DNA of 55,270 nt, the filler included, from Bipalium vagum (Eukaryota): the NCBI GenBank assembly GCA_037834085.1. It is 3 parts of 3 records of this genome, joined end to end, with 100 filler letters (N's around TTAATTAATTAA, not from the genome) between each part and the next. Parts side by side here need not be neighbours in the genome. Positions count along the whole stretch, not along the records: positions 16,246 to 34,779 come from JBBMKC010026130.1; 2 more parts are not named here. One strand, written 5' to 3'. The notes under the pieces were generated by a model, which saw only the letters and a list, made by a program, of their open reading frames with translations, was not told where the DNA came from and ran no database searches. How positions within the stretch are numbered: the first letter of the stretch is position 1; every line of letters begins with the position of its first letter. Position numbers and translations under genes: made by a program. Below, in pieces: positions 16,246 through 34,779 of this stretch.

Positions 16246-17922
16246 AAAAATCGATTTTGACTGATTTTTATAAAATAATAAATAAAACGATAATTAAATA
16301 ATAGTAAATAATAAACAAAAAGAAAGTGAAATATCATAATAAATAAGATAAGGTATAGTAATAACATGTATGAATATTAGTATTAGTATTGATCATATTT
16401 ATTTATTTATATGTCGAAATTATTAATTATATTAAAAAAATAATAAGGCAACATTAAGTTACCATTAATAGAAAACCAATAAAAACTTTTATTTTAAAAA
16501 AGGAAAAAATGCTAAAAATAGAAAGAAAGATATTATATACAGAATTATATTAAGAAAGAGAAACTTACTAATTATGGAAAAGGAGGAAAAAAGTGTATAA
16601 AAGCAAACAGAAATTACAGGATAAACAGAAACAAAAAAATTTATATAACAGATTGTACGAGGAGAACAAACGGACGTAAACGAATAGACAGACCAAGAAA
16701 CCACGGCTTAATCAGTGCTCTAACCAATCTACGGATTAAGGTCAAACAGCGGAACAGATCAAATTCTAACAAAGCAGAGAATAAACCTACAACTTATATT
16801 CTACCGTTACGAAAAACTTGTCAACGCCACCACGACGAAAATGATAATAATAAATATCTCTAACGAGTCAGTCAAGAAAAAAGATTAAAGAACTGCAACA
16901 ACACTTAAGACAGGACAATTACAACATTCCAGACACGTAACAAGGCAAACCAGAACTTTCAATTCCGGAAATAAAAGGAACCTTCAAGTAGACAAATATA
17001 TACCATTTTTGTTTAATTGAGAAAGTAAAATTTTATATTTAAGAACTTGTTACATCATTGTAACAAAGTTTTATTATATTAATAAATTTTTATAACTTCT
17101 AATATTGTTATTCTATTATTGTCATTAGTTGTAAGTGTTTTAAACCTTGATAACGATTTGAAAGAGCTAAATAAAAGAATTTGATTTTTATCATTAAGTA
17201 AATCTTATTGACACTTGTTACATTCTTGTAACAAAGTTCTAGTATAAAGTTTATACATATATTAATAATATAATATAAAACTATCTTGGAACCAAAGCTT
17301 CACAAGAATAGTATCGATCTTTAATAAGCGTTTATAATTGTTATTTCATTCCTTTATTAAACAGGTGTGTCTTGTTAGACAAGACAGTTTGTAATAATTA
17401 AATAATTAAATACTCAAGGCCAGGACCTGAGGATCATTTAACTTTTTTCAGTTCCTATTTCTTATTACCTTTTTCGTTTATTTGTTGTTACTTCGCACAC
17501 TAAGTAGGATAGTGAAGTATATTTTTTCTTCTTTTACTGAGGACCTCTGAGCCTAAGAGCGAGAGGATTTTTTCTAAATAATAATAATTATAAGTAATAA
17601 AATCACTTTAAAGCCCTTAAATCAGTCAGAACCGATATCATGTAATTGTAACTTTATTTTGAATAAACTAAAAGTATTTAAAAGTCAAGCGTTTTCTTAG
17701 TCATTTCAACCGAACACACTTATAAACAACCTTCAACCGTTAAGACCTATGTAATAGCAAGCTCCACCTTTAACATCAACTCACGTTATCTTAACACGTT
17801 ATTAATGAATATGTAATATTTAAAATAATAATCTTCAAAGCTTTTTGCTTAAACTTGCTTCAATTTTTAAGAAACTTAACAATCATATAAAATAATTGAT
17901 TTAATAATTTATATTTGTAGTA

Positions 17923-18065
17923 CAGGGGTCCGCAAAAAAACTTTGTTTTTACAAAATGAAGCAAATGGTGATTACATTTAATTTTACCAATTTTGAGTTG
18001 TATGTTTCATGTTTTTGTAGTATAATAAATAATTTAGTAAAACGAAGTTTTTTTGCAGACCCCTA
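17923..18065. mobile_element. 143-bp Tc1/mariner-type MITE
   Basis: TA-CAGGGGTCCGCAAAAAAACTT ... AAGTTTTTTTGCAGACCCCTA-TA, 21-bp TIR with 2 mismatches. Confidence 0.85.
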
Positions 18066-19427
18066 TATAAAAACATAAAATAGTACAAGTTTAAAAGATA
18101 ACCTAAATTAATAAAATAAAAGTAAACACTAACAAGGAAATAAATAGATAAAAAATAATATCAGATCAGTGATTAGTTCTCAATTCGGGGAATCTGACAA
18201 ATTTTATTAATATTTATATGAAATTCACAATGAAATTATAATATACAGAGTCGTTATCAACAATTTTTTTACAAATTAGAGCTATAGAAAAATAAGTTGT
18301 CACAGGAACGATTCGTTAATTGGGTTCGTTTTCATTTATGATGAAAAATTTCTTATAATAATTCAAGAAGTTGTTTGATATCCTAAAAGTTGAAAACAAT
18401 TATAAAATTTAACAATAACTATAAATTTTTAAATGTTCTAAATATATTAAAATTGCAGAAATTTCAATTCTGAACAAGACCAAATATTAAATATCACAAA
18501 ATAAAATAGTAAGTCATTTCAAAATTTCTTTCATTTAAATTTTTAAAAATATATAATTATAAAAATAACTTCTTTTAAAGAGGGACAAAATATCAATCAA
18601 TTTAAAAGTTGGAATATTTTACTTACTCATAGTCAATGTAAAATTTTCTTATATTATTTAAAGTCTTTAATATTCTTTTTGAAAATAAAATAAGTTCCAT
18701 ATTTCTATGTTGGATGAAAAGTAAATAATGAAGCAACATCTTTAAAACAGGGTAAAACAAAATATTTCTATATTCATATTTCAACATAATAGATTTAACA
18801 TTTTGTTTGAATCAATCATTTTATTATTGTTTATCAACGGTGTAAATATTAGATTTATGATTTATTATTTTTAGTATGGAAAAATTCGAGTATTGCGCAG
18901 CTAAAAATTTTTTATTTGATAAGGATTAACTTATAGCAGGAATTGTCAGTAAAATGTTTAAGATATTAGACGAAATTGTACCTTCATTTTCGTACTTTCC
19001 GGAATCGTACTTCAAAAATGGCATAGAAATATGGAAGAACTTGACTAATTGTGCTTAAATTTTAGAAGACTATATTCAATAATAAAAAACAATTTTTATT
19101 AAAAAATTCATGTTTCATTTTGGCTTCTATAACTTTATACGAAACCTCTATATAAAAATAATTTAAGATAACTAAATATCAGAAACTACTAAAATAATTT
19201 TAATATCAGATTTTTTAAATATTATCAAAAAAGTTAAATCATTAGGAGATATACCAAAATAAAATAATTTAGATAATAATATTCAATATTTACTAGTCGA
19301 TATATTTTAGCGATATTAAAGGAATGAAAAACCAAAATGTCTTTCACCCAAATCGTACATTTTTTTGAAAAATATATTATCTAAGATATAGGAATCTAAG
19401 AAATAAATATTTATATTATAGATACTA

Positions 19428-19589
19428 TCAATACATGAAAAAATACTTTCTGTTAGTTTCTGAAATATCTTCTAGAATACTATTTTCCTGATTCTCTCGC
19501 ACAACAATTCTTTCTTTAACAGCCGTTTCTGTTACCATATCTAATGTTTTACCTTTGTCTAATTCTTTTACTATTTCTTCTTCAGGTTT
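19428..19589 (-). CDS. CACNA1: Probable terminal exon of the Cav1-like gene (acidic tail, TGA)
   Basis: In-phase cag acceptor; [53 protein letters not shown]. No recognisable homology. A possible 51-nt intron 19396-19446 would give a similarly short end (KFLYLR*). Confidence 0.6.
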   Translation of the reverse strand, partial: KPEEEIVKELDKGKTLDMVTETAVKERIVVRENQENSILEDISETNRKYFFMY

Positions 19590-22500
19590 CTGTAAACACA
19601 ATCATTAACACAATTAAAGGAAAAAGTAAATTAAATAAAATTACACCATAAAGGATAAATTGGTCAAGCGTATTTCTAGCAATTATTTGTAATAATTATG
19701 AAGTAAATAAAATTTCTTAGTAAATCATTGAAAGATAAATTAAATGAAATTCAAGTGAAAATTTATTTTAATATTTTATCTTCACATCTCTCCATAACCA
19801 ATAAAATAAAAATTGCATAAATAAACTTGTTTCAGTAATGAAATTTTGAAAAGATTTTATTTTATTTTATATATTCATAATTTTCTAATTACACAAATAA
19901 AAAATAATTTTGTTCTTTAATTTGAATTATTAGTAATAATTAATTAAAAGATGCATTCAATAAATAAAGAACAACAAATACTGATCCTTTCACGGGTTGC
20001 TCTTCTTCAACTTTTTCATTCTTTTTATCTTTATTTCTCAATTTCCACATTCTGTATTTATTTTGAATAATTAAAGTACCGTAATACTTTCCGACCGTCA
20101 CCGTACTTTTAACTAAAACAATAAATCTATCAAACTCTTATCAATAAAATAATCAATATGTTTTAGGAGGAATGGTTTACAAAAATTGGAATTAGATATC
20201 AATCTTAAAATAGTGTGAGGAAAAAATTATTTCATTTCAACAATAAATGTTAAATGAATAATAGACACAATTTTAAATAAAGATTTGCTTAATCTCACAT
20301 CTCTCAATTCATTAAGTGTAATAAATTAAAATAATATAATAATAAAAAATAATATAATAATAAATAATAATAATAACTGATGAAAAAGGTATTCGTACAC
20401 TTCACTTTTTAAGACAAAATAGGTTTTTATTGTCTAAATCTTTTACGTTTTCTCACAAGTTGTAATTAGAAAAAGAACGAAAAATAAGAAAAAAACACAA
20501 AAATTTATTTATTTGAAATAGTTTTAATAAAAAGTTTTAAGACTCCTAAATTTCATTTGGAAAAAACTATTGTGCACATTTATATTTGAAAAGGAAGTGA
20601 TTTTCGGCACAAACATCGTATCTAATAATTTTTATGCAGTCCATTAGTGTAAATTATAATTTGGGGTATTCTAGGCATTGATTCTACTAAATGGTTTGTA
20701 ATTTGCGTCCACAAATTTTCTTTAGAGTTAATATCTGGTGATTTTGGCAGAGTAATCAATGTTTCTGGTCTTATATAGCAAAACTTTCTTGGTTATTTTC
20801 GCATTTTGCTTCGGACTAGTCTTATTGGAACAAGAAATGTTTTAATACCTATTTTTAAGACTTTATTAAATTGTCTTGGATTATTTTAATGTACACCAGG
20901 GAAGGCATAATACTCTTTATTATCACAAATTTTCATACACCAATCCAAAACCATATTACTATTGCTTCCATGTTTCACAGTTGGAATGATATTTTGAAGT
21001 AAAATTTCTGTCTTAGGTTTTCTTTGAAGAAATTTTTGCCCATCAGAATCAAAAATATTGTATTTATTTTCATCAGTTAATAGAACAACATACCAGAATT
21101 CCACAGGCTTCTCGGTATGAAGTTTAGAAAAGTCAATTGTCGGTTTATTTGATATATTTAGTGATTTGCTTCTTGTACCGATTTCGAGTGGTTACCGATG
21201 AAAAATAATTCCTGAAATTCAAGCGAGGTCCTCTGCAAGTTTTTGAAAACTTATTTGTGGATTTTTCATTACTCTTTAAAAAATTTTCTTTTTTTCTCTG
21301 TTATTAACTTTGGACTGCGTTATTTATTCTCATTTGCAGAAAACAAAATTTTTTTATTACACATCAAACTGTAGAATAAGATAGTATCAATTCATTTCCA
21401 ATATTGCGAAAGTTAATTTTGTTTTTAAAAAATGACACTTCAACGTTTTGTTACTTTATCCAATTCGGCTTTTTAAAAATTAAGTTGATTACAATTAAGC
21501 AAAATAGATGATTGAAACAAGTTTCATTTTGTTCAATTAAATATTTTCATTTTCAAATCAGAAACATGAATTTGTTAAAGAAAACTGTAAAAATACCTTT
21601 TTCCCAATGAAATGTATCACTTCTATTTTTTTATGAAAACTATTATGATTCAAAGTTTTTTCTAACAATTTTTTAAAAATTTCTCCTTTTCTTTGAGTTA
21701 ATCAAAAATTTAACATACTTTGATTATTACAACCTGTTTAAGTATACAAATACGTTTTCCCACACTGAATACTTCATTTTCTTACAAAAACAAGTTTCTG
21801 TGAAATGAATAAAAAGAATTAACTCTGGCAGATAGATACCCGACCCAGCATTTAATTCAGATTGTGTACTGTATGGATCTATATCAAGTAATATCGTTAG
21901 TTTTCTATCTTCAATTTTTACAATTTTTTATAATTTTTGCTACTGATATCATAATTGTATGCATTGGGGTCTTAAACATATTTTTTTGTTTGAGATTTTA
22001 GAGAATAAGAGTGTCTAGATCTTTCAAATAAATAACTTTTACAACAGATATAACATTATTCCAAATTTCAAGTGAACACCCGTTATGATTAAAAAGTGCA
22101 AATATTTTTTATATCTTCTAGAAATGTGACATCAGTTTTGAAACACTAACAGGAATAGGTTTTAATTTTTAAGAAATAAATGTATGTAAAGTATTTAAAG
22201 AAACCACTTACTGTTTCTGGGAATAAGTTGTTCGATTAGTGCTGAACTAGTCTTTGGCCATAATCTTTTGATAAGAATGCGTAATTCTTCGTTATATTCA
22301 CTTACAGACTTTGGATCTTTTGCTTTAAAATAAAGGTGTTTAGCAAAAAAATTATAAAGCTTGACTTCAAAAAATAAACATAAGAATGAATTTTACTAAG
22401 AACTTACAATTCATGAAATATAAGACGTAATATTTAAATTATTAAAAAAACTGAAATTCGAAAAATTATAATAATTCCACAAATAGCAAATAAATATCAT

Positions 22501-25500
22501 AGTTATCTGGTTTCATGAAGCCGATGTATTTTATAAGGTTTTAACTTCTCTTCCTTTAACATTCGTTGAACCAAAGTAGATGGAATATTAGTTACCAATC
22601 ATAATGTTGAAAGGCTGTCTCACCATTCATATCAGCAATTGATTATTTAATATCGATTTTATGTTCACTTGCCAAAGAATACTTTCAGTTTTCTTAAAGT
22701 TCACATATTTGGATAATGCAGAACATGTATATGAGTCCTTAAACGCCATTTTTTTGGCGTTTGATTTCCCTAGTTGTAGCTTTGAGAGTTTCCATTACCA
22801 TAAGAACATCGAGTTAAATCAATTTTCAAACCTAGATTCATATCTAAATTTAAAAGATTTTTCATCAGTTATTCATTTAAACAAAACCTGTTTTTATGAA
22901 GTTACTAAAGATAAGTAGATTTAAAAATATATTTATTTTATATAAAGTTGACAGGCAAAAAGTTAACTTCATCGGTTTTGATACAACCGATATATGTAAT
23001 ATCTGGTTTTTATCATTAAAAATTTCACGGAACCAGTCTGACATATTAGCACTTTATAAAATTTATAATCGGTGTTTATTTTAAATTATTACAAAAATTC
23101 AATGAATAAATGAACAAATTCCAAGTTTTGTCTTAATTTTAAAAAAGTATCACCAAAAACATTGCACATCATTAAAATTACCTATTGTAATAAAGATATC
23201 ACGAGGCACCAGAGTTTTTTGAAGTGGTATTCTAAATTTTAATAGAGAGAATTTTCAAGAGAGAATTCAAGGCCATCTTTGATTCGACCCTACTGTGATT
23301 ATAAAATTTGATGAAAATTTGCAAAAAGTGTGAAGTTCTTAGAAAAGTTCTATATATGTATCTTGCACACTCATTGGGAAAATCACTAAGATTCTGCATT
23401 ATAATTTAACATTTGCACGTGTTGTACTTCATTTACTGAGAGAGAATAAATAAAAGACAAAGTAATTCATTTTTGGACAAGAACCAATTAGGTAAATCAA
23501 ACGAAAAATACATTGAGAACATTGTAACTATTGACAAAGCGAAATCATTTAAAGATAGTGTCATAAAATATTTTTCTTCAAATAATTAAAGACTGAAAAT
23601 ACAATTCTTTCATAGTCGAATAAATACATCGCAAATACTTTCTTCGAATCTAGAATTTATTGAACGATTAATCACAACGATAAGTTTAAGTAATTGTCAA
23701 GGTCGATCTTATATAACAATGTTATCTCAAACAAATGAAAATAATTGAGTGAAATTTTGGTTGAAAAATATTTCCCCAATATTCAGCTAATTTGGGACAA
23801 TGTGATTTTCGCTATTGCCAAGACTTAAGAAACAAATTCCTGGTTAAAATCAGGATTGATTGATTTTTCTGAAATATTTCAGGGAATTTCTTTGTTTGAA
23901 AAATTTTGTAACAGTTTCCAAAGCTGTATTGAATTTCAAGGAATGTTTTTGGATAGCTGTACTTAAATAAATGTTCATATTTTACTATTTCTCTTTATTT
24001 CACTCCTTTCGCTCTTCCAATGGGATATTGTGTATAATACTTAAATGTATTAATATTACTTTAATCATACTTTTATGCAAAATTAAAAAGAATGAAATAA
24101 ATAAATAATATTAGACTACCTCCAAATGGTAACTTAAATCGTAAATTTCTTCTAATCAGGCTAAATAACATTGTACGAAAAAGAATGGTTCCATCTGGTT
24201 CTAATGGCATATCCATATGCATTAATTTCTGAAAATAAAGGTTTAAAATAGCCCTATTTTTGAAAGTCATAAATTACAAGGGTGGGGTGAAGAGTTCTTG
24301 ACCTAACAAGAAAGGAACACAAATTAAATAAAATAGATATTATTTTTGAAAGATGCAAGTCTTTTTAATTTAATTTCATAATTCTTTTGTAACAGTTGTT
24401 TGAGTTGAACAGTTATCGTATTTTTTCAAAAAACTGATAAAATAGAACAAGGTGTTGTAATTACGTATTTCATTTTGTACGGATTAAGTCCAACCAAAAA
24501 TGAAATACATCATTTTCAAAAATCAAAAAATAGGTAGTTGAATTTAAGCGTGTTAACGCATGAATTGAAGATGATGAATGTTCGGGAAGACCATGTTCAA
24601 CAACAAATGATAAAGTTTTGAAAAACTTCAAAGAATAGTTTCGGATGATAGTCCTATATAAGTTGATAAATTTGCTGAAATCGCAAAGATTGGTGCGCGT
24701 GTGTTGACAATTGATCAAAAGCCTCTATAAATCTATCAAAAAAATACTTTTCGATACTGCAGCTTAATTCAGTTGAATTCCTTAGGCGATTCTTTACTGT
24801 TGAAAAAACACGGGTACATCATTACACCCTTGAAACAAATCAGCAGTGAAAGCAATGGGTAGAAGGACGTTCCAGTGCACCAAAGAAGACAAAAGGTTTT
24901 CCATCAACAGAAAAAATATGACAACGTTTTTCGGGACGCAAATAGCATGATATTGATTGATTATCTGGAAAAAGGAAAAACAATTACTGGATTATATATT
25001 ATGTATCATTATCGAGCAAGTTGAATGACAATATCCAGAATAAACGTCCGCATATAGAAAAGAAAAAAGCACTTTTACATCATGACAATACATCAGTTCA
25101 TTCTTCAACAGTTTCACATGGAAACCTGTATGAAGTATTATTTGAATTGCTTCTTCATTCACCATACTCTCCGGATTTAACACCGAGATATTTCTTCTGT
25201 TTTCTAAACTTGAAAAAAAAAGGCTTTCGGAAAATAATTCAGCTCAAATCAGGTAATTCAATAGAAAATGAATGCATATTTTAAGGCTCTTGATAATTCA
25301 TAATATGCTGATGGGATTAAAAAAACTTGAATATCATTGGAAGTAATACATTGTATTTCAAGGAGACTATGTAGTAAAATAAATAAAAATTTTGTCAAAA
25401 AATTGTTCTTTCTTTATTAGGCCGAGAACTTTCAACCCAACCATCGTAGATGACAAGGCATTTTTGAACACCAATATAAATAAAATTCTTTATTAATCTT

Positions 25501-28500
25501 AGAAGAAAAAAAAAGTACATTAACATTTTCAATATTATAAAAAATATTTATATAATTCATATAAATATTTTTTTATAAAATTATTATATTTTTATTTTAA
25601 TTTTGGAAATAAAGAAAAATATACAGTATATTATATATTACCATAATAATATTATTATAAAAAAATACAATGCATTTTCAAATACACCTTTAATTAAATT
25701 AAATGTCAATAAAGTGTCGAAAATATTTTTGATAATATTCATCAATAAAGATCATTTTTAAGGGACACAATAATATTAGAATATTCTTACGTTCATGCAT
25801 CTATCATGAGGACACATTTTACCAAATCCCAAAGGTGGATCAATTTTTAACAACAAATTAACAGCATCCAGTGGCTTTATGCGACCCCTTGTGTTTAAAT
25901 AAATAAATATTAAGAGTTAAGAAATAGAGTCTTTAAACCTTCCTTCAAAGTCATATCCTGACCAATGTTCAATGAACTCAATCAAATTATGGGGATTCAG
26001 TAAAGAATGATCTTTTATTAAAAAGTCAAAATTATCAATTATTATCGCCAAGAAAAGTTGCAAAATCTGAAATATAAAAAAAACTATTTTTCCATAAAAT
26101 TATTGGCAATATGATTTATTTTAAAAGGATCAGGTTAGCAACAAGCAATGAGTTTCTAAAGATTATACACAATATACATTTATTTTAAAATTTTAGAATT
26201 ATGATTAGAAAATGATAACTTTGTACGTAAACATGTTTTATTTGATAAAACTAAAAATTTACAATGTAAAAAAATAAAATAAAACGGGTTTTCAACTATC
26301 TGAATTAACGATTTCACCTGGATTTAAAAGTTCATAATACACCACACCCTTCTTTATCTCACCAAACTCAGAGCGTTATTTTCTTCTTAAAGCACTGTGA
26401 CTTTGAAATCTGCTTCGAAAATAAATTCAAATTTCATCTGATGTCACCATGAAAGGAAAAAACGATTTTCTTTTTGTCTTTTGCTTATTGATTGTGTTGC
26501 AGTTCAAAACCTTTTACAAATTAATTCTGTAATTTTGTGATTGTGGAAAAATAAAGATTATTGTCCAGTTATTGTTAATAAAAGTATTGACATAACCAAA
26601 CCTAGTGAGGAAAACTTATATAACGGCTTGGTTAATATAAATATTAACAGACAACATTTTGAAATATTTTTTAGATCATCTTCAATATGCAGTTTTGAGA
26701 AAAAACATGATCCTAATAATTCAAAAAATTAATTTAATTAGAATTAATTTTGACATTCTAAAGTGTACATTTATAAAAATAACACGGAATCCTGTAGTTT
26801 AAGTCCCTAACTTTCATAAAAAAATTTAATTTTTAAAAAGTTTTCAACTACTTATAATAATACAGCACTACTTACAATTATAAGTAGTTGAAAACGTTTT
26901 AAAAATTAATTTTTTTATAAAAGTTAGAGACCTAAACTACAGGATTACCAATAACACCTTCAGAAAATTGGATATGAGAGTTATAAATGATGAAATATGT
27001 AAAATTTGATATAATTTGATAACAGAATATCTATTTTGAAATAAAAATATTAACCTAAATTATTTAAAATGATTTAATGAACTTAAACAAACCGTAGAAT
27101 TTTAAATGTAACATGATATAAATTAAAGGTTAACATTGACTATCTTCTAAAATATCAGATTTAAAATAACTAAATAAATATTTTTCAATTAAATGAAAAA
27201 CTTACCAAATAAGAACTAATTATCATGAATGAAGGAAAATAAAAATATGAAAAGAAACTCCCACAACTCGCAGAGCTGTTATTACATTTAGATAAATCTA
27301 TAAAATTTTTAGATGTTTTGATTATTTATTGTTAAATCACTTCACCTGGATCATAACAGCTGATCATGATTTCGTGCCATTTTCCACCAGTTGCACACCT
27401 GAAATATTTAAAAAGTAATTATTATAAATTAAATAATATCACTAAATCTAAAAAGATACCCCGTTTTAATTTACATAATTATAAAATTTTTTGACAAAGT
27501 GAAATGAAAAAAAATATACAACCAATGAGCGTAGTTAAACATTGTTGCATTTAAAGTTATCATATGCCTATATATAATATTTCTAATCAGATTCCAAGAA
27601 ATCGGAAATACATCAAAGGTTTGAAACTGATCATCTGGTTCACCACACTAGTTCCTTCCAATCGTTGATCCGAAAACTCTCGCTAAAGTCTATGGGAGCT
27701 TGGAACATGAATTAAGAGTACTATTTGTATATTGATAAAAAATTATGTAAGAGGTTTTCGGAGGTCTTTTATTATAGAAAAGATTATTAATGAAAGAAGA
27801 ATATTTATGAATACAAAATAGAATTATCTATGAAATATAAGATTTCATGGCTTATACCTTCATTATTTTTTTAAGAATACTAGGTTTTTCGGAAAGTCCT
27901 TGTGCATAATTAGTTTCTAATTTTATATTAATATTTAAAGTAAATTACATTTTGTTTTGTTAAGTGTTATACATTATTTTAAAGCTCGATTTTAATATAA
28001 CGTAATATTATTTGAAATGAATGAAGATAATTAAATCATATATTGAATGATATTTTTTATAAATTTTTTTTCCACATCCCTTAAGCAAATTTTCTTCAAA
28101 GTATCCTAATCAATGTGATTTTATTCTCAATTTTTAAAGTTTGAGAAATTGAAGATCTGAAGAGCTTAGCAAATTTTATAAAAATAAATAGGTAGTTTTG
28201 GTAAAAGCAATAATTAAAAAGGAATACATAATATAGGGTCATTTTATGAAAATAAAAGATGAACGTTACCTTAAAAGAACTAAGAAAGAATTAAATACAT
28301 TTTGGAAATTGTTATTAATGGTAATAGCACTGTTGGGATTATCTAAGCCAATTTTTGCAAAGAACTCTACTCCTATAATTGCAAATGCGAAAAAGATCAT
28401 AAAAACAAAAAATATCAACCAAGGCATGGTCTAGAAATAATAAGTAATGATTAATAAAATATAAAATATGTTTTACTTTAAATGATTTCATAAAGGTCCA

Positions 28501-29787
28501 CAAAAGTTTTTGAAATGATTTAAACTTCATCAGCAATTTTACAAGTCGGAAAACTCGAAGCAACCGAAATATATTTATATTAGCAGTTTCTGGAGCAATC
28601 TGAGATTTGAAAAAAGTAGATTAAAATATTATTTTTGACTGAAAATTTTATTTATTTATATTATTTGAACACAAAAAGTGAGTTCTATAATCTGTATTAC
28701 TTGATTATTTAGAAATTTTGCTTGATAATAAAACCATTTAATTGAAGTATTTATAACTATTTTAACCCTGTTGTTCTCCTCGGGTATATATGACCCAAAA
28801 CGAATTTTAAAATTAAATTCCTTGGCCAAATTTCAGATGAGAAGAGTTTCAGTGAAACTAAAATTTGTTATTATATGTGCTAATTATTAACGAAATTTTT
28901 AATTATTAAAATCTGAAAGCCATTCTTGAAAGATTTGACGCATCATCCACCCATTTTTATTGTGAGTGTATTTCACATTTAGATCTGACACGTTGACATT
29001 CTTAAAACATCGAGGTTTAGCATGCTTTCCTATATAATAGCAGGGTTAACCTGTCTTTTTTATTTTAATGCCTTTACTTTCTTCATGTGGTAATACGAAA
29101 CTTCTGCTGCTGATTGATCTGTAGTATAAAGCGATTTTGTCGCAGTTATATACATTATCAGCTGTATATTGACTAACTTTTTCTTTCATTATATTTCGGA
29201 AGTTTTCAGTTTGAGAGTGATCAACTGATTTCATTTCTCCGGATAAAACTTTCCAACTGATTTTATGCCGCCTCTTAAATTTATCCAACCAACATGTCGA
29301 TGCTTTGAAATCAATTCTATTTGTTTTTTTTGCTACATATTAAGCAATTCTTTTTAATGTCGGACCATTTATCGGGAAGTTTCTCTCACGTAACCTTTGA
29401 AACATCTCTAAAATAGTACTGTCAAAGCCTGTTCCTGAATTTTCTAAAGGATTTATTTCGATTTCAGTATAAATTCTTTGAATTGTTGACTTGCTAGTTT
29501 TATATTTCTTGCATAGCATTTGCTGGGAAGATTCTTTATTGCGAAGTTGCTTGGTAATATTATATTTATCTTGATAAGATAATTTCTTATTCATTCCTGA
29601 TTTTGAAAATGTTATATACCAAAATATTATTAAAACAAATTATTGAATTTTGGGACCAAGAATTTTATTTTTTATATGAAAATATCGAGAAATATGATAA
29701 GTACAAATAATTGTTCCAAATATGGAGTTTGGTTTGATTATAGAAGTGGTCCATTTCAGAAATTGGTCCAAAACAGAAGTTGCACTG

Positions 29788-29818
<31 letters not shown>

Positions 29819-32800
29819 GTTCAGTATGATATGTCGTATTTAAACAGTAAATAAAACAAGTCATAAAAACTGGTAAATAAAATCTATTAATTAAAATATT
29901 TACCATTACTGTTTAAACACTCTTGCCAACGATATAAAGTTTAATTATTCAAATTTGATTAAATTCCGTAGTTCTGGGTTCAAAAAACTGGTCTATGTTC
30001 TTTTGAATAGAATCTTGGTCGCGCAAGGTTTTATTGAGAAGATATCATTCATGTCCTTGAACCGATCATAATTTGCTGGTGACAGGTCTAGAGTATAAGG
30101 TGGATGAGGTAAAACCTCGTACTACAAGTCATGTAATTTTTGTACAGTCATTTTAGAAATATGAGGTCTTACGTTATCATAAAGGAAAATTGGCCCGTGT
30201 CGTAATGGACTTAGAAAAATATTCTTTGTCATATATTTTACATCAATAACTTCTCAAACGTAAAACGTATGTTTTCTTTCAATAATAAATAGGCGGATAA
30301 CAGAAATTTATCGATTGAATTGACGTATAAAATGTAATTGTTTAATTATTGATTTTAATGTAAATATTAATAAAATTAAGATTATACAATGTCGGTGATT
30401 CTGGTCAAAAACCAAACTAAAAGTTTTTCATTGTTAATAGGAGAAGATAGTACTTACATTTATTTGTAAGAAGATCATGTCCACATAGCTGCCAATGATA
30501 ACGATACAATCAAAAATGTTCATAGGATCATTAAAATAATTCTGAAATTTTAATTTTTTAACATATTTTTAATGAAAACTGATATTTACTCTGACTTTGA
30601 AGGCAATTATTTTCAGAATGGCATCAAATGTAAATAAAAGAACAAAAATATAATTCAAAACCATTAAAATGTTATTTTGGGTGATGGAACTCAAATCATT
30701 CTAAAAACAACTTTCGGCTTACTAGAAAAACATAACAATAAGTACAAACCACTGCGGTCATGGAAATTGTATTCAATATTATTACTGAAAAGATGAAGTT
30801 CTCAAAGATTTTCGAATCCACAATTTTCCAGATTCGATATCTTATGCGACCAGTCGGAATATATCGACGAATTGGTCGGGCTTGTAGTACAAAAGAGATG
30901 CATTGTTTCTGAAACGATTTCTTTCATCAAAACTTGGCTTAAATATTAAATGTGAATGATTATTAAAAACAATTCATTTTTCTTTAAAGTAGCTTAAAAT
31001 TCTAATTAAAATACTTTTCCTTCCATAATTTCTGGAAAAAATTTAAAAGATTGCTTTTTAGGGATTTTTACTGGGAAATTAAAATAAAACCTTTTTCTAC
31101 TATAAAACCTGTAAGCCACCGTACAATCTTGCTTCAAAAATGATAGCTTCAGAACCATTTCTAACAATAACTAATTTTACTGTTTTTTACTTCCTATAGA
31201 ATGTATTACTTACTTTTTTCTCTTTCTTATTAATTACGAAAATGAGATATTTAATAATTAACTTTTTAATTGGTGTAAGTCAGACAATATTTCTTATTAA
31301 AATTTAATATTAAATTCACCAATAAACCTATATTAACTCTAAGCGTACCACAGGGACTTCTGAGGCCCCATATAATATTTGAAATGTTTACAGATTTTTC
31401 ATAGTTTGATAATAAGCGTTTGTTTAACTTAAGTATTTTTATAGAAATTCAAAAACTTTCAAAATCAAAAAATGCAGAATTCTTCGATGAGTCCAGCAAC
31501 GAAGAATGTAAAGATATCAATTATGAATCATCAACTAACGATTCAGAGAATGATAACGAAATCATTTATTTAAACATAGAATAAGAAAACACAAAAGACA
31601 ACAACCGCAATGATAGCACGGGTAATAGTTTTATCTATAAAAAAAAACAGTTTGGTCAAAAGAACCATTTATTAATAACCAAATAACGAAGATTTTTTTG
31701 CTATTCGTTAATTTTATAAATTATCTCTATCACAGCTTACTTCATTTTTATCCAATTCGTCGCTTTTGTTCTGAGACTCTCGAGATTTTTGATAGGATAG
31801 AATGACATATCCTATAAATATGTTTAACATGAAGAACTTTATAATGATGAAGAAAACTAAGTAGAACAAAAACATTGTGCGATTATTATTGAAATATGGC
31901 CCATAATTGGGACTTGTAGCATCAATGGTTCTGTATAATAACCTAAAAAGTAATTTAAACAAATATTCTTTTGTGAACATTTATCATACTCCGGATATCC
32001 GGCATAAGTAGTGATCACAAACAAAGTTAACATGGAGCGAAAAATATTATCAAAATTTAAATCGTAATTATGCCAAGTTCTGTTTTTCACTCTTGCGACA
32101 TATAACCCATCAAAAGAATAAGAGATGTAGGTGCCCCTAAAAGACATAAATTTATCAAGAAAAAAAGTCGATAAGAATTTAACATGCAATCCTCTTTTGT
32201 CATTCGAGATTCATCAGAACAGTAATGCAACTTTCCACCGAATAAATTGATTCCGATTACTGAAAACATAAATGTCAACAGAAGCATCACAAGCATGATT
32301 CTCCAAATCTTCCCCACTGCTATTATCAAGGAATTGATTATATTCTGAATAAAATAGTTTCTTACGTCTAGAAATAGACCATTAAATAAAATATCATACT
32401 GATAAAGTTCACTCGTTTATTTTTATTTTTTTATCCTGAAGAAATTACTTAAATAAAAACTCATTGAAGTGATCTTGTGTCATTAAAACCAGAAAAATGT
32501 TGCTGATTTTTAGTGTTGAATGTACATGAAGATCCAGTTGAAAATGTATCAGGAGAAACTTGATAATTTTAAATTGGGAGGTCCCAGTATTATTAATCGA
32601 AATCAGATTTTGGTAAAATTTTATGAAAATTTATCATTGTGTGAGGCAAAATGGCGGGTTCTTGAAAGTGGCTTAATCCAAAAAGAGCTAAAAGCAGGTA
32701 TTCACATAAAGACGATAATGTATGCTATATTCTTTCGTTCGACAGGAATTGTTATCAAGTTCGGAAAGTAAAAGAAGATCACGAAGGAATGACATACAAA

Positions 32801-33815
32801 TATCTGTTTGACTATAGCTTTTGCAGTAGTTTCTGACAGACGCCAAAAGTGTGATGTAAATAGGATAATTCTGCACCATGATAATGCCCGTCCTCATAAA
32901 TCTTCAATAACGACTGAATACTTGAATGGTATGGGATTCCAGTTTCTTCAACACTCTCCTTGCACTCAGAACTTATCTCCCTGTGACTGTTGGCTCAAAT
33001 ATCTGAATGAACATTTTAAGGGGTCAAAAATTTGTGACAGAAAAAAGTTAGAAACAGCTGTTTTCTTTCTTTGACAACATTCTTTCTGATGACTGGAGCA
33101 CAGTCTTTGGGAAATTTCAAAATCGGATTAGACGGTGTATTGCAGTTTTATGAGATTACGTTTAAAGATTTTGTAAAAAATTTCAATAAACTTTTTGTCT
33201 TCTTACTTATACCAAAGACCTTTCAAATATACTAATAATTTTCAGAGTATGGTTCAATTAACAGTTAAAAATAATGTAACTTGGTTAATTTTCTCATAAA
33301 AATAGTTCAAAATCATTAAAGTTTAATAATCCGGTAAGTTTAGTCTTCCTTTTTATTTATTTAAGAAATTAAAAATTGATTATTTGCAAAATTACATTCT
33401 CAACAAAAGTAATTAATTAATAAAAGAAAAGAAAACTCAGTAAAATCTTACTGAAAAGTTTCACTGAAACCATGGACATTTTTAATAATTTAATGAAGAA
33501 TTATACCAAACTGAAAAACATTTTCAACATTATTAATGTTTCATATTTTAAAAGTACAAGGGGTCTACCTTGGATAAATTACAGATCTATCACCTGTTTA
33601 TATTATAAGCCTCACCATATTGTGGATGACTTTAATGGTGTCTCGTGAATAATAATAAAAATATATATAAATAACTTATAAATTAATGAATCTAAACTAT
33701 ACAATAACCATAAATCGAAATTAAAATATAAACCTTTAATTCTTTTGCCTTTTCAATTGTTCTTAGAGTCTTTAGAATTCTTAGTATCCTTAAAGTTTTC
33801 AACCCTGATAATTCA
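19428..33815 (-). CDS. CACNA1: Voltage-gated calcium channel alpha-1 subunit, Cav1/L-type-like, 5'-partial (IIIS4 to C-terminus), 17 exons, ~703 aa visible
   Basis: Manually spliced exons (minus strand): 33734-33815, 32184-32344, 31990-32136, 31741-31942, 30750-30908, 30590-30700, 30458-30541, 28477-28599, 28270-28430, 27346-27398, 27206-27297, 25939-26066, 25791-25887, 24120-24228, 22212-22322, 19982-20112, 19428-19589. All introns are GT-AG with consistent phases and there are no internal stops. Motifs: S4 [13 protein letters not shown] and [66 protein letters not shown] and the Cav1-type [22 protein letters not shown]. Junctions fall where I recall them in vertebrate Cav1 genes. Confidence 0.93.
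19982..20112 (-). CDS. CACNA1: Cav1-like exon: IQ calmodulin-binding motif
   Basis: (I)[43 protein letters not shown]. Confidence 0.9.
20375..21768 (-). mobile_element. Decayed Tc1 (DD34E) transposon in Cav intron
   Basis: [31 protein letters not shown]; degenerate ends resembling CAGTGTGGGAAAACGTATTTGTATACTT. Confidence 0.8.
22212..22322 (-). CDS. CACNA1: Cav1-like exon: pre-IQ
   Basis: (A)[36 protein letters not shown]|gtaagt. Confidence 0.9.
23200..23950 (-). mobile_element. Possible heavily decayed hAT transposase C-terminal fragment (intronic)
   Basis: Fragmentary resemblance to the hAT dimerisation region (FP...RTFL...LLKILSIK); many stops. Confidence 0.3.
24120..24228 (-). CDS. CACNA1: Cav1-like exon: GPHH/proximal C-terminal domain
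   Basis: [36 protein letters not shown]. Confidence 0.9.
24277..25446 (+). mobile_element. Near full-length decayed mariner in Cav intron, antisense to the gene
   Basis: TA-flanked imperfect TIRs; [49 protein letters not shown]. Confidence 0.88.
25791..25887 (-). CDS. CACNA1: Cav1-like exon: proximal C-terminus
   Basis: [32 protein letters not shown]; aag acceptor, 51-nt intron. Confidence 0.92.
25939..26066 (-). CDS. CACNA1: Cav1-like exon: end of IVS6 and EF-hand region
   Basis: [42 protein letters not shown](R). Confidence 0.92.
26786..26949. mobile_element. Palindromic (foldback) MITE with 8-bp TSD, Merlin-like
   Basis: ~70-bp inverted arms around an ~18-bp spacer, GG...CC termini, direct repeat AATAACAC at 26778-26785 and 26950-26957. 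Confidence 0.85.
27206..27297 (-). CDS. CACNA1: Cav1-like exon: loop and first half of IVS6
   Basis: (D)[30 protein letters not shown]|gtaagt. Confidence 0.9.
27346..27398 (-). CDS. CACNA1: Cav1-like exon: repeat IV selectivity-filter segment
   Basis: ttcag|G TGT GCA ACT GGT GGA AAA TGG = (R)[17 protein letters not shown]. Confidence 0.9.
28270..28430 (-). CDS. CACNA1: Cav1-like exon: IVS5 and P1 helix
   Basis: [53 protein letters not shown](R). Confidence 0.92.
28477..28599 (-). CDS. CACNA1: Cav1-like exon: IVS4 and S4-S5 linker
   Basis: [41 protein letters not shown]. Confidence 0.92.
28900..29787 (-). mobile_element. pogo/Tigger (CENP-B-like) transposon remnant in Cav intron
   Basis: TA-CAGTGCAACTTC terminus; psq-like HTH, CENP-B HTH ([28 protein letters not shown]), [27 protein letters not shown]; stop codons and a deletion. 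Confidence 0.88.
29788..29813. repeat. (TA)13 microsatellite at the pogo target site
   Basis: Directly visible. Confidence 0.95.
29900..30205 (-). mobile_element. mariner 3' fragment
   Basis: [10 protein letters not shown]...[15 protein letters not shown]. Confidence 0.75.
30458..30541 (-). CDS. CACNA1: Cav1-like exon: IVS3
   Basis: [28 protein letters not shown], 84 nt, |gtaagt donor. Confidence 0.9.
30590..30700 (-). CDS. CACNA1: Cav1-like exon: IVS2
   Basis: [37 protein letters not shown]; 49- and 48-nt flanking introns. Confidence 0.9.
30750..30908 (-). CDS. CACNA1: Cav1-like exon: III-IV linker and IVS1
   Basis: [53 protein letters not shown]. Confidence 0.92.
31337..31700 (+). mobile_element. 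piggyBac-like 5' end remnant
   Basis: TTAA-CTCT terminus with subterminal imperfect palindrome GGGACTTCTGAGGCCCC, then an acidic stretch [28 protein letters not shown] and KTVWSK. A similar TTAA-CCCTG terminus lies at 28762. Confidence 0.45.
31741..31942 (-). CDS. CACNA1: Cav1-like exon: P2, IIIS6, start of III-IV linker
   Basis: [67 protein letters not shown]|gtaagc. Confidence 0.93.
31990..32136 (-). CDS. CACNA1: Cav1-like exon: repeat III pore loop
   Basis: GTYISY...[30 protein letters not shown](E); flanked by 47-nt GT-AG introns. Confidence 0.92.
32184..32344 (-). CDS. CACNA1: Cav1-like exon: III S4-S5 linker, IIIS5, start of extracellular loop
   Basis: [53 protein letters not shown]; cag/gt boundaries. 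Confidence 0.92.
32400..33235 (+). mobile_element. Decayed mariner in Cav intron
   Basis: [34 protein letters not shown]. Confidence 0.8.
33500..33650 (+). mobile_element. Short non-LTR (LINE) reverse transcriptase scrap
   Basis: [11 protein letters not shown] resembles the RT motif NYRPITCL..YK. Confidence 0.4.
33734..33815 (-). CDS. CACNA1: Cav1-like exon: IIIS4 voltage sensor
   Basis: ttcag|T GAA...AAG|gtt; [27 protein letters not shown], with R/K every third residue. Confidence 0.88.
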
Positions 33816-33834
33816 CTGAAATAAAATTAAACAA

Positions 33835-33883
<49 letters not shown>
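33835..33883. repeat. (ATT)16 microsatellite
   Basis: Directly visible. Confidence 0.95.
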
Positions 33884-33884
<1 letters not shown>

Positions 33885-34329
33885 ACAAAATAGTATTTCT
33901 GTTTCTAGAAAAATTGTACATTTGAGCTCTTTTATCAACCAAACGGAAATGTAAAAATTATGAATGACAAACTCAAAAATAGTTTGTGAAATATTGCCGT
34001 ATAATCTTTTGCGATTTGTCGTCTTGTTTAGTCAGTAGAATTTCTAAAGCACTCTGTGGTCTTTCATTATCATCAATTTTACGTCCAAACTTTAATACTA
34101 CGTACATTCTTCAGTCCTTTTCTTCGACTACCTTAATTGTTATCCAGACAGACATTACATGTCTTCCCACCAATGAGATACGGAATTATGTCTGTTATTA
34201 AAGTGAATTGAATAATTCTACTACACTTGTAGATTTTTATCTGTATCTTACCTAAAACGATCTTCTGGTTGTTATTCGCATATTTTAAAAGATGTATAGA
34301 ACAAAAAATTTTTTATAAAAACAATAATA

Positions 34330-34670
34330 TTTTTTTCGATAATATAATGCCCATTGTTATCAATTATCTTTGTCCAACGTTCAGGCAAAAGTTCAATAGC
34401 AAGCTTGAATAACTTCTGTTCCTTTGGCAATTTCAACAGCACATTTGCTGTTGAATTCTTTTCCCTGTAAGAAGTGGTGTAATGAACGGAAAATAATAAT
34501 CTGTTGGAGCCAAACCTGGACTAAATGGTGAGTGAGGACGAAGTTTTCAGCCAAACTCTTTTAGTTTCTCCCTGTTCATTTTTGATGTGTGCGGTTTTGC
34601 ATTATCTTGTTGAAGAGTAACGCCTGGTCGATTGAGCAGAAATGGACTGGTAAGTTTCAATTTATCACAT
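34330..34670 (-). mobile_element. mariner 3' fragment
   Basis: LQQDNAKPHT, PHSPFSPGLAPTDYYF, ELLPERWTK. Confidence 0.8.
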
Positions 34671-34779
34671 ACAGTGCCGTCCAAAATATTAGCAATTTTT
34701 TAAAAAAATATGTTAAAAATAAGGCACAAGTTGAATTATTTATTAAAACATTTTTATAAGTACAAAAACAAAAATCACA

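What the first reader, a model, noticed from the sequence alone, without database searches (positions are those of the whole stretch)
27346..32136. Cav1-like channel that has lost both visible selectivity-filter glutamates (xxAG instead of EEEE)
Seen: the repeat III pore reads [10 protein letters not shown] (Ala codon GCC, 32001-32003) and repeat IV reads [12 protein letters not shown] (Gly codon GGA, 27383-27385). Known: Cav1/Cav2 channels have Glu at both positions (STF-E-GWP, ATG-E-AW), and the EEEE ring confers Ca2+ selectivity, with the repeat III Glu the most influential. Cav3 (EEDD), NALCN (EEKE) and Nav (DEKA/DEEA) do not match this pattern either. The near-invariant Trp after the repeat III filter is Tyr, and a Lys sits directly after the repeat IV position. 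A-to-I editing cannot convert GCC or GGA into Glu codons. Inference: this is a functionally re-purposed L-type paralogue (monovalent/non-selective or non-conducting), not a decayed copy, because 17 exons keep frame and splice sites while neighbouring transposons are full of stops.
Basis: partly seen in the sequence, partly recalled or inferred. Interest (0 to 1): 0.9.

Follow-up and report, generated by a model that had tools for sequence, protein, structure and literature searches.

The report
L-type-like channel missing two pore glutamates
An intact, evidently selected but extremely diverged L-type (Cav1) calcium-channel gene carries alanine and glycine where two of the four calcium-selecting glutamates should be, so it probably no longer works as a calcium-selective channel.

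Summary
On the minus strand lies the 3' half (IIIS4 to the IQ motif) of a four-repeat voltage-gated channel gene: 16 exons, all GT-AG, 660 codons without a stop. GCC (32001-32003) aligns to the repeat III filter Glu (E1014 of rabbit Cav1.1) and GGA (27383-27385) to the repeat IV Glu (E1323). A Lys follows the Gly, and Tyr replaces the Trp after the repeat III site.

Exon-by-exon scores and a tree put the gene in the Cav1 type, next to flatworm Cav1 (support 96/91). Its branch is about 40 times the median length.

It keeps 62% of the columns that are invariant in 20 bilaterian Cav1 sequences; control sequences keep 96-98%. Retention falls in step with column conservation, and the S4 charges, S6 gates, GPHH and IQ remain. 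This is a constrained gene, not a decaying copy.

The only closer relative found is a 69-residue UniParc fragment, 60% identical.

Not shown: repeats I-II (off the contig), transcription, a canonical paralogue in the same genome, dN/dS, and any permeation property.

Most likely it is a voltage-gated channel with poor Ca2+ selectivity. A non-conducting voltage sensor is the main rival. I rate it a new variant of a known kind.

The parts
33734..33815 (-). Exon 1 of the visible part: IIIS4 voltage sensor (K/R at every third position kept)
32184..32344 (-). Exon 2: IIIS4-S5 linker, IIIS5 and start of the turret
31990..32136 (-). Exon 3: repeat III turret, pore helix and selectivity filter
32001..32003 (-). 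GCC = Ala at the repeat III filter position (E1014 of Cav1.1)
31995..31997 (-). TAT = Tyr in place of the conserved Trp two residues after the repeat III filter position
31741..31942 (-). Exon 4: P2 helix, IIIS6 and start of the III-IV linker; Pfam Ion_trans
31837..31839 (-). AAG = Lys in mid IIIS6 where all canonical Cav1 have Ala; shared with the only closer relative, P0001
30753..30908 (-). Exon 5: III-IV linker and IVS1
30596..30700 (-). Exon 6: IVS1-S2 loop and IVS2
30458..30541 (-). Exon 7: IVS3
28660..30250 (-). Broken pogo/Tigger-like transposon (HTH_Tnp_Tc5 and DDE_1) inside intron 7; high copy number in run X1
28477..28599 (-). Exon 8: IVS4 voltage sensor (R, R, R, K, K kept)
28270..28430 (-). 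Exon 9: IVS5, turret and pore helix of repeat IV
27346..27398 (-). Exon 10: repeat IV selectivity filter
27383..27385 (-). GGA = Gly at the repeat IV filter position (E1323 of Cav1.1)
27380..27382 (-). AAA = Lys directly after the repeat IV filter position (Ala in most canonical Cav1 of the alignment, Gly in one)
27206..27297 (-). Exon 11: IVS5-S6 loop end and first part of IVS6
25939..26066 (-). Exon 12: end of IVS6 (conserved Asn is Gln, codon 26058-26060) and proximal C-terminus
25791..25887 (-). Exon 13: GPHH / EF-hand region (Pfam PF16905, above its cut-off)
24120..24228 (-). Exon 14: pre-IQ region
22212..22322 (-). Exon 15: pre-IQ region
19943..20112 (-). Exon 16: IQ motif (Ile-Gln kept; Pfam Ca_chan_IQ at 20 bits, below its cut-off of 26.7); end of exon unresolved
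19431..19589 (-). Tentative exon 17 (C-terminal tail); in frame if the donor after codon TCA near 19985 is used; no homology support

Best explanation
This is the 3' half of a live, protein-coding, highly derived Cav1-type alpha-1 subunit gene, probably a lineage-specific copy in a flatworm-related animal. The voltage sensors of repeats III and IV, the S5/S6 pore scaffold, the pore helices, the GPHH/EF-hand region and the IQ motif are retained. The protein should therefore still fold, sense voltage and open (inferred). Two of the four glutamates that build the single high-affinity Ca2+ site are replaced by the small neutral residues Ala (III) and Gly (IV), and a Lys sits directly above the repeat IV position. 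Established mutagenesis of Cav1.2 shows that neutralising the repeat III and IV glutamates lowers Ca2+ affinity by orders of magnitude and abolishes Ca2+ selection over monovalent ions (my own knowledge, not from a paper read here). On that basis the channel cannot hold Ca2+ tightly. If it conducts, it should pass monovalent cations (Na+, perhaps K+) with weak divalent block. That would make it a voltage-gated depolarising or non-selective cation channel and not a Ca2+ entry channel. Shown here: gene structure, family type, residue identities and the constraint pattern. Inferred: folding, gating and permeation.
For: The model is intact: 16 GT-AG exons and 660 codons with no in-frame stop, against 70 and 57 stops out of frame. 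Introns carry 7.1% stop codons, which gives about 1e-21 for a chance open frame. The gene is of Cav1 type: exon 4 scores 60 bits to Cav1.1 and 38 to Cav2.3, exon 5 scores 53 against 32, and no NALCN chain matches even at E<=10. Pfam GPHH passes its cut-off. In the tree the model joins eight flatworm Cav1 sequences with support 96/91. Constraint is graded: the model equals the consensus in 62%, 41%, 27% and 16% of columns from invariant to variable, and 75% of replacements at invariant columns score BLOSUM62 >= 0. Ala and Gly align to E1014 and E1323. The piece holds no second copy of either pore exon. A 69-residue relative from another source (P0001, 60% identical) shares derived features, including the IIIS6 Lys and the same exon start. 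This suggests, from one fragment only, that the lineage exists in more than one species. The two filter changes run against the AT-driven amino-acid drift of the protein.
Against: Repeats I and II are not on the contig, so the full filter is unknown. No RNA run holds the locus, so transcription is unproven. No orthologous DNA is available, so dN/dS was not computed. The branch is so long (4.57 against a median of 0.12 changes per column) that relaxed constraint is also part of the picture. The Trp to Tyr change in P-loop III, the Lys in IIIS6 and the Asn to Gln change in IVS6 might prevent conduction altogether. The read support comes from one run, which may be the assembly's own sample.
Confidence: 0.45

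Rival explanations
1. It is a non-conducting voltage sensor. The protein keeps its voltage-sensing and cytoplasmic coupling parts but no longer passes ions. It would signal by conformational coupling or scaffolding, as the two Cav1.1 paralogues of teleost skeletal muscle do.
For: S4 charges of repeats III and IV, the III-IV linker, GPHH and IQ are kept. The pore carries several changes at otherwise invariant positions: E to A, E to G, W to Y, a Lys in IIIS6 and Asn to Gln in IVS6. There is a precedent: teleost Cav1.1 copies are made non-conductive by single substitutions in or near the filter (PMC5330888).
Against: The pore helices, S5 and S6 are still among the better conserved parts. That would be unnecessary for a pure sensor. 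Small residues at the filter widen a pore and do not plug it. No coupling partner is known.
Confidence: 0.2
2. It is still mainly a Ca2+-permeable channel. Glutamates in repeats I and II, plus other acidic residues such as the Glu four residues after each filter position, would give a lower-affinity but still Ca2+-preferring pore.
For: Acidic residues remain at +4 in both P-loops. Cav3 channels work with EEDD, and outer-vestibule residues can shift selectivity (PMC4436565; PMC10120453 and PMC9694082 abstracts).
Against: All Cav1/Cav2 surveyed keep EEEE (PMC4436565). All five planarian Cav alpha-1 subunits keep an all-acidic ring (PMC5124351 supplement). The added Lys next to the repeat IV site lowers the negative charge further.
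Confidence: 0.1
3. It is a dispensable or recently inactivated copy. The gene drifted under relaxed constraint and is, or is becoming, functionless. The break could lie in the unseen 5' half or in regulation.
For: The end branch is about 40 times the median. 38% of universally invariant residues are changed. There is no expression evidence. D. japonica transcriptome mining listed only five Cav alpha-1 subunits, all with canonical rings.
Against: At this divergence a neutral sequence would be full of stops and frameshifts, and none is seen in 660 codons and 30 splice sites. Retention tracks column conservation. A diverged relative exists elsewhere.
Confidence: 0.12
4. It is not an extra paralogue but the only (or the Cav1B-type) L-type gene of an unusually fast-evolving animal.
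For: Only one contig is visible, so no canonical copy was seen. The amino-acid make-up is strongly AT-driven (FYMINK 43% against 33-36%). The tree places it as sister to the sampled flatworm Cav1 clade, which lacks Cav1B sequences.
Against: Flatworm Cav1A and Cav1B are both E/E/E/E where examined. Every other animal Cav1 in the alignment, including those of parasitic flatworms, keeps 96-98% of the invariant columns.
Confidence: 0.1
5. It is a sequencing or assembly error at the two codons.
For: Coverage of the repeat III codon by the run's contigs is only partial.
Against: These are two separate substitutions, not indels. One needs two base changes from any Glu codon. No differing letters were found in run X1. 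Neighbouring residues are also altered in a coherent way.
Confidence: 0.02

Closest known systems
Canonical Cav1 (L-type) alpha-1 subunits, e.g. Cav1.1 (5GJV), Cav1.3 (7UHF), flatworm Cav1A/Cav1B
   Same: Best exon-by-exon matches. Same order of IIIS4-S6, III-IV linker, IVS1-S6, GPHH/EF-hand, pre-IQ and IQ. S4 charges are kept. The exon 4 start coincides with the first residue of many single-exon fragments from other animals. It groups with flatworm Cav1 in the tree.
   Different: Ala and Gly replace the repeat III and IV filter glutamates, with a Lys after the repeat IV site. Only 37-47% identity where other bilaterian Cav1 are very alike (they keep 96-98% of the invariant columns). 118 of 313 invariant residues are changed.
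Non-conducting Cav1.1 paralogues of teleost skeletal muscle (Schredelseker et al. 2010, as reviewed in PMC5330888)
   Same: A Cav1 copy whose pore has lost its normal Ca2+ handling through filter-region substitutions while the voltage sensors are kept.
   Different: The teleost copies carry single substitutions in an otherwise ordinary Cav1.1. Here two ring positions are neutral and the whole protein is remodelled. This is an invertebrate (flatworm-like) lineage, and no functional data exist.
NALCN (EEKE / EKEE / EEEE rings)
   Same: A four-repeat channel whose ring departs from EEEE and includes a lysine, giving non-selective or Na+-leaning permeation.
   Different: No NALCN chain matched the pore III exon even at E<=10. 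This gene has full S4 charge sets and Cav-type GPHH and IQ. Its Lys is next to the ring, not in it.
Nav1 (DEKA / DEKG) and Nav2 (DEEA)
   Same: A small neutral residue (Ala or Gly) at the repeat IV ring position, as in DEKA and in the flatworm DEKG.
   Different: Repeat III carries Ala, not Lys or Glu. Sequence similarity to Nav chains is far weaker than to Cav1. A Cav-type C-terminus is present.
Cav3 T-type splice forms with exon 12a (Na+-permeable)
   Same: A Cav-family channel that has shifted towards monovalent permeation.
   Different: That shift comes from an extracellular turret with the EEDD ring unchanged. Here the ring itself is altered and the gene is of Cav1 type.

Membership tests
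Cav1 (L-type) alpha-1 subunit | Closer in sequence to Cav1 than to Cav2, Cav3, Nav or NALCN | tested here: met
   Exon 3: 35 bits to Cav1.3 against 27 to Cav2.2. Exon 4: 60 against 38. Exon 5: 53 against 32. The tree joins it to flatworm Cav1 with support 96/91. The tree held no Cav2 or Cav3, so the type call rests on the PDB scores.
Cav1 (L-type) alpha-1 subunit | EEEE ring: Glu at the filter position of all four repeats | tested here: not met
   Ala in repeat III and Gly in repeat IV. Repeats I and II are not on the contig.
Cav1 (L-type) alpha-1 subunit | Four homologous 6-TM repeats | tested here: inconclusive
   Only IIIS4-S6 and all of repeat IV are present. The contig ends about 960 bases upstream of exon 1, and no IIIS1-S3 exon was found there.
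Cav1 (L-type) alpha-1 subunit | Positively charged S4 voltage sensors | tested here: met
   IIIS4 has K, R, R, K, R and IVS4 has R, R, R, K, K at three-residue spacing.
Cav1 (L-type) alpha-1 subunit | C-terminal EF-hand/GPHH, pre-IQ and IQ calmodulin-binding region | tested here: met
   Pfam GPHH scores 33.6 bits (cut-off 26.8). Ca_chan_IQ scores 20 bits, below its cut-off of 26.7, but the Ile-Gln pair and flanking aromatic residues align.
Cav1 (L-type) alpha-1 subunit | AID helix in the I-II linker for the beta subunit | not testable with these tools
   The region lies outside the available contig.
Non-conducting Cav1.1 type (teleost) | Gating charge movement without ionic current; coupling to a release channel | not testable with these tools
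   This needs electrophysiology. Only the sequence precedent is available.
NALCN | NALCN-type sequence with reduced S4 charges, no IQ, and a ring of EEKE or EKEE | tested here: not met
   No NALCN chain appears among the PDB matches at E<=10. Full S4 charges and GPHH/IQ are present.
Nav1 / Nav2 | DEKA / DEKG / DEEA ring and a Nav-type III-IV inactivation linker | tested here: not met
   Repeat III has Ala, not Lys or Glu. The III-IV linker aligns to the Cav1 linker. Nav chains score 22 bits or less on the pore III exon.

The most novel reading that the evidence does not exclude
A flatworm-lineage Cav1 duplicate has been converted into a new kind of voltage-gated monovalent-cation (Na+-leaning) channel. 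Its filter has neutral Ala and Gly in repeats III and IV and a Lys just above the ring. This would be an origin of sodium or non-selective permeability from an L-type scaffold that is independent of Nav1, NALCN and Cav3 exon 12a.
Probability: 0.25. Interest if true: 0.85.

Novelty: new variant of a known kind. Interest (0 to 1): 0.62.

Why it matters
[quoted passage not shown] The known exceptions are the non-conducting teleost Cav1.1 copies. A constrained Cav1-type gene with two neutral ring positions would be a natural experiment on how a Ca2+-selective pore can be re-purposed. It offers ready-made P-loops to graft into Cav1.2. If the host is a flatworm, it would add an unlisted member to a channel set that is studied as an anthelmintic target. 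It also warns annotators that 'L-type calcium channel' labels given by homology can hide pores that cannot select Ca2+.

Tried and rejected
- Word-indexed homologue searches with exon 4 and exon 3 found no candidate. The third search, with a flatworm Cav1, served only to collect reference sequences.
- The exhaustive HMMER search with exon 4 gave one closer relative (P0001, 69 aa, UniParc only). Everything else was at 51% identity or less.
- The first metagenome scan found nothing. The second found four loci (L001-L004) that encode other four-repeat channels, all with Glu at the site and none a close relative.
- Exact look-ups of two window ORFs and of P0001 in public assemblies were not on record.
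- No RNA run holds the locus. The one DNA run is available as contigs only.
- A tblastn search for alternative, mutually exclusive pore exons in the piece found none.
- An Rfam scan found nothing.
- NALCN, Nav and Cav3 membership were considered and rejected on scores and domain content.
- Not done: the joined 660-residue model was built only inside scripts from window coordinates, for local BLAST, MAFFT and IQ-TREE. It was not sent to any search, fold or complex tool, so there is no whole-protein database search and no structure prediction.
Full report
WHAT IS THERE. The piece (16246-34779) is AT-rich, about 25% G+C. Six-frame reading showed a series of stop-free blocks on the minus strand that read like repeats III and IV of a voltage-gated calcium channel. 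I fixed exon borders from the sequence and checked them in a script.

There are 16 exons between 33815 and 19943. Every acceptor is AG and every donor that is used is GT; the end of exon 16 is unresolved. The phases are compatible, giving 660 codons with no stop. The other two frames of the same exons hold 70 and 57 stops. Introns on the same strand carry 7.1% stop codons, so a chance open frame of this length has a probability near 1e-21.

Introns fall into two classes. The short class is 46-54 nt. The long class is 0.8-2.1 kb and holds transposon remains. Intron 7 contains a broken pogo/Tigger-like element (Pfam HTH_Tnp_Tc5 and DDE_1). Its depth in the one public run reaches about a thousand times that of the exons.

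A 17th exon (19431-19589) is possible but has no homology support. The contig ends about 960 bases upstream of exon 1, and no IIIS1-S3 exon is found there. Repeats I and II cannot be read.

THE OBSERVATION.
- Against PDB chains, the pore III exon aligns end to end with Cav1.3 and Cav1.2. Its Ala falls on the filter Glu, which is residue 1014 in the rabbit Cav1.1 chain.
- A stop-free stretch around exon 10 aligns with Cav1.3, Cav1.1 and Cav2.2. Its Gly falls on the repeat IV Glu, residue 1323 of Cav1.1.
- In a MAFFT alignment with flatworm, mollusc, arthropod and vertebrate Cav1 and two diplonemid channels, every sequence that genuinely covers the columns has Glu at both. The only other letter, in the Danionella entry at the repeat III column, lies in the spurious start of a truncated entry.
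- The Trp two residues after the repeat III site is Tyr, and a Lys follows the repeat IV Gly.
- tblastn with three canonical Cav1 proteins found each pore exon only once in the piece. There is therefore no NALCN-style alternative exon that could supply Glu.
- Contigs of run X1 report no other letter at either codon. The repeat IV bin is at single-copy depth and the repeat III bin is about half covered. The run may be the assembly's own sample.

WHICH FAMILY. Exon by exon, Cav1 chains outscore Cav2, Cav3 and Nav chains. The scores are 35 against 27 bits for exon 3, 60 against 38 for exon 4, and 53 against 32 for exon 5. Exon 12 does not discriminate. No NALCN chain matched at E<=10. Pfam finds Ion_trans, GPHH above its cut-off, and Ca_chan_IQ below its cut-off.

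A maximum-likelihood tree (24 rows, 702 columns, LG+C20) joins the model to eight flatworm Cav1 sequences with support 96/91, as their sister. Signature columns lean the same way but weakly: 3 to 1, with 8 matching neither. The tree contained no Cav2, Cav3 or flatworm Cav1B, so the Cav1 call rests on the PDB scores. The flatworm affinity is provisional, and the organism is not identified.

HOW UNUSUAL THE PROTEIN IS. Identity to any Cav1 is 37-47% over repeats III-IV and the C-terminus. The model's end branch is 4.57 changes per column against a median of 0.12. Of 313 columns invariant in 20 bilaterian Cav1, the model keeps 62%. Left-out control sequences keep 96-98%.

Retention falls stepwise with column conservation: 62%, 41%, 27% and 16%. 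Three quarters of the replacements at invariant columns are conservative. The S4 charge ladders of repeats III and IV, the S6 Asn of repeat III, the DNF gate end, GPHH and the IQ pair are present.

Part of the drift follows AT pressure: FYMINK residues make up 43% against 33-36% in the references. The two filter changes go the other way. Together with the open frame, this is the signature of a gene still under selection with changed or relaxed demands, not of a pseudogene.

RELATIVES. The exhaustive HMMER search of 1.84 billion representatives with exon 4 returned one protein closer than the general Cav1 background. This is P0001: 69 residues, UniParc-only, 60% identical. It starts at the same exon border and shares derived features, such as the Lys in mid IIIS6.

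No other relative was found by word-indexed searches, two metagenome scans or exact look-ups. The lineage therefore appears to exist in at least one other species, on the evidence of that one fragment, but it is almost unsampled.

LITERATURE.
- Cav1 duplicated in flatworms into Cav1A and Cav1B (PMC8980814).
- The curated Dugesia japonica channel table lists Cav1A, Cav1B, Cav2A and Cav2B as E/E/E/E and Cav3 as E/E/D/D, with no sixth alpha-1 subunit (PMC5124351 supplement).
- The known precedent for a Cav1 with a disabled pore is the pair of teleost Cav1.1 paralogues. They are made non-conductive by single substitutions in or near the filter (PMC5330888).
- Free-living flatworms keep Nav1 (ring DEKG), while parasitic ones such as Schistosoma lack it (PMC6259924).

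HOW IT MOST LIKELY WORKS. Shown: an intact Cav1-type gene with neutral, small residues at two ring positions and a Lys beside one of them.

Inferred: the protein folds and gates by voltage. It cannot form the high-affinity Ca2+ site, because in Cav1.2 neutralising the repeat III and IV glutamates removes micromolar Ca2+ binding and Ca2+ selection.

I therefore favour a voltage-gated channel that passes monovalent cations with weak divalent block (0.45). The main rival is a non-conducting voltage sensor (0.2). The other rivals are residual Ca2+ preference through other acidic residues (0.1), a dispensable or freshly dead copy (0.12), the sole fast-evolving Cav1 of an odd animal rather than a paralogue (0.1), and sequence error (0.02).

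LIMITS. There are no repeats I-II, no transcript evidence, no orthologous DNA for dN/dS, no named organism and no canonical paralogue in view.

The joined model was made only inside scripts from coordinates.

VERDICT. It is a new variant of a known kind, of solid interest to channel specialists, pending cDNA and electrophysiology.

Noticed in passing
window 28660-30250 (minus strand, inside intron 7): A broken pogo/Tigger-like DNA transposon (Pfam HTH_Tnp_Tc5 and DDE_1). Its depth in run X1 reaches about 27,000 against about 23 for unique sequence, so the genome holds roughly a thousand copies.
   Followed up: partly
window 34275-34700 (-), 32793-33071 (+), 24961-25281 (+), 29996-30253 (-), 20889-21191 (-): Further transposase-like fragments with mariner/Tc1-type motifs, all interrupted by stops. 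Pfam support is weak (DDE_3 at E=0.06) or absent.
   Followed up: partly
window 31837-31839 and P0001: A Lys in the middle of IIIS6, where all canonical Cav1 have Ala, is shared by this gene and its only known relative. It may line the inner pore or the drug-binding fenestration.
   Followed up: no
window 26058-26060: The S6 asparagine of repeat IV, invariant in the reference Cav1 set, is glutamine here. The repeat III S6 asparagine is kept.
   Followed up: no
window 33835-33883: A perfect (ATT)16 microsatellite lies 20 bases upstream of the exon 1 acceptor. A (TA)13 run lies at 29788-29813 inside the transposon.
   Followed up: no
introns 2, 3, 5, 6, 8, 10, 12 of the gene: A tight class of 46-54 nt introns sits beside introns of 0.8-2.1 kb. 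Every long intron that was inspected holds repeat remains, which suggests the gene was once compact and was later inflated by insertions.
   Followed up: no
L001:1308-1403, L002:1432-1527, L003:6639-6719, L004:9735-9815: Metagenome contigs encode pore III-like exons of other four-repeat channels (motifs STQEGWP and STTEGW). All keep the filter Glu. Their origin is unknown, possibly protist.
   Followed up: partly
run X1, joints table: Several contigs of the run skip parts of the transposon-bearing intron, for example 28666 to 30545. This is what collapsed or polymorphic repeat copies would give. No exon is affected.
   Followed up: no
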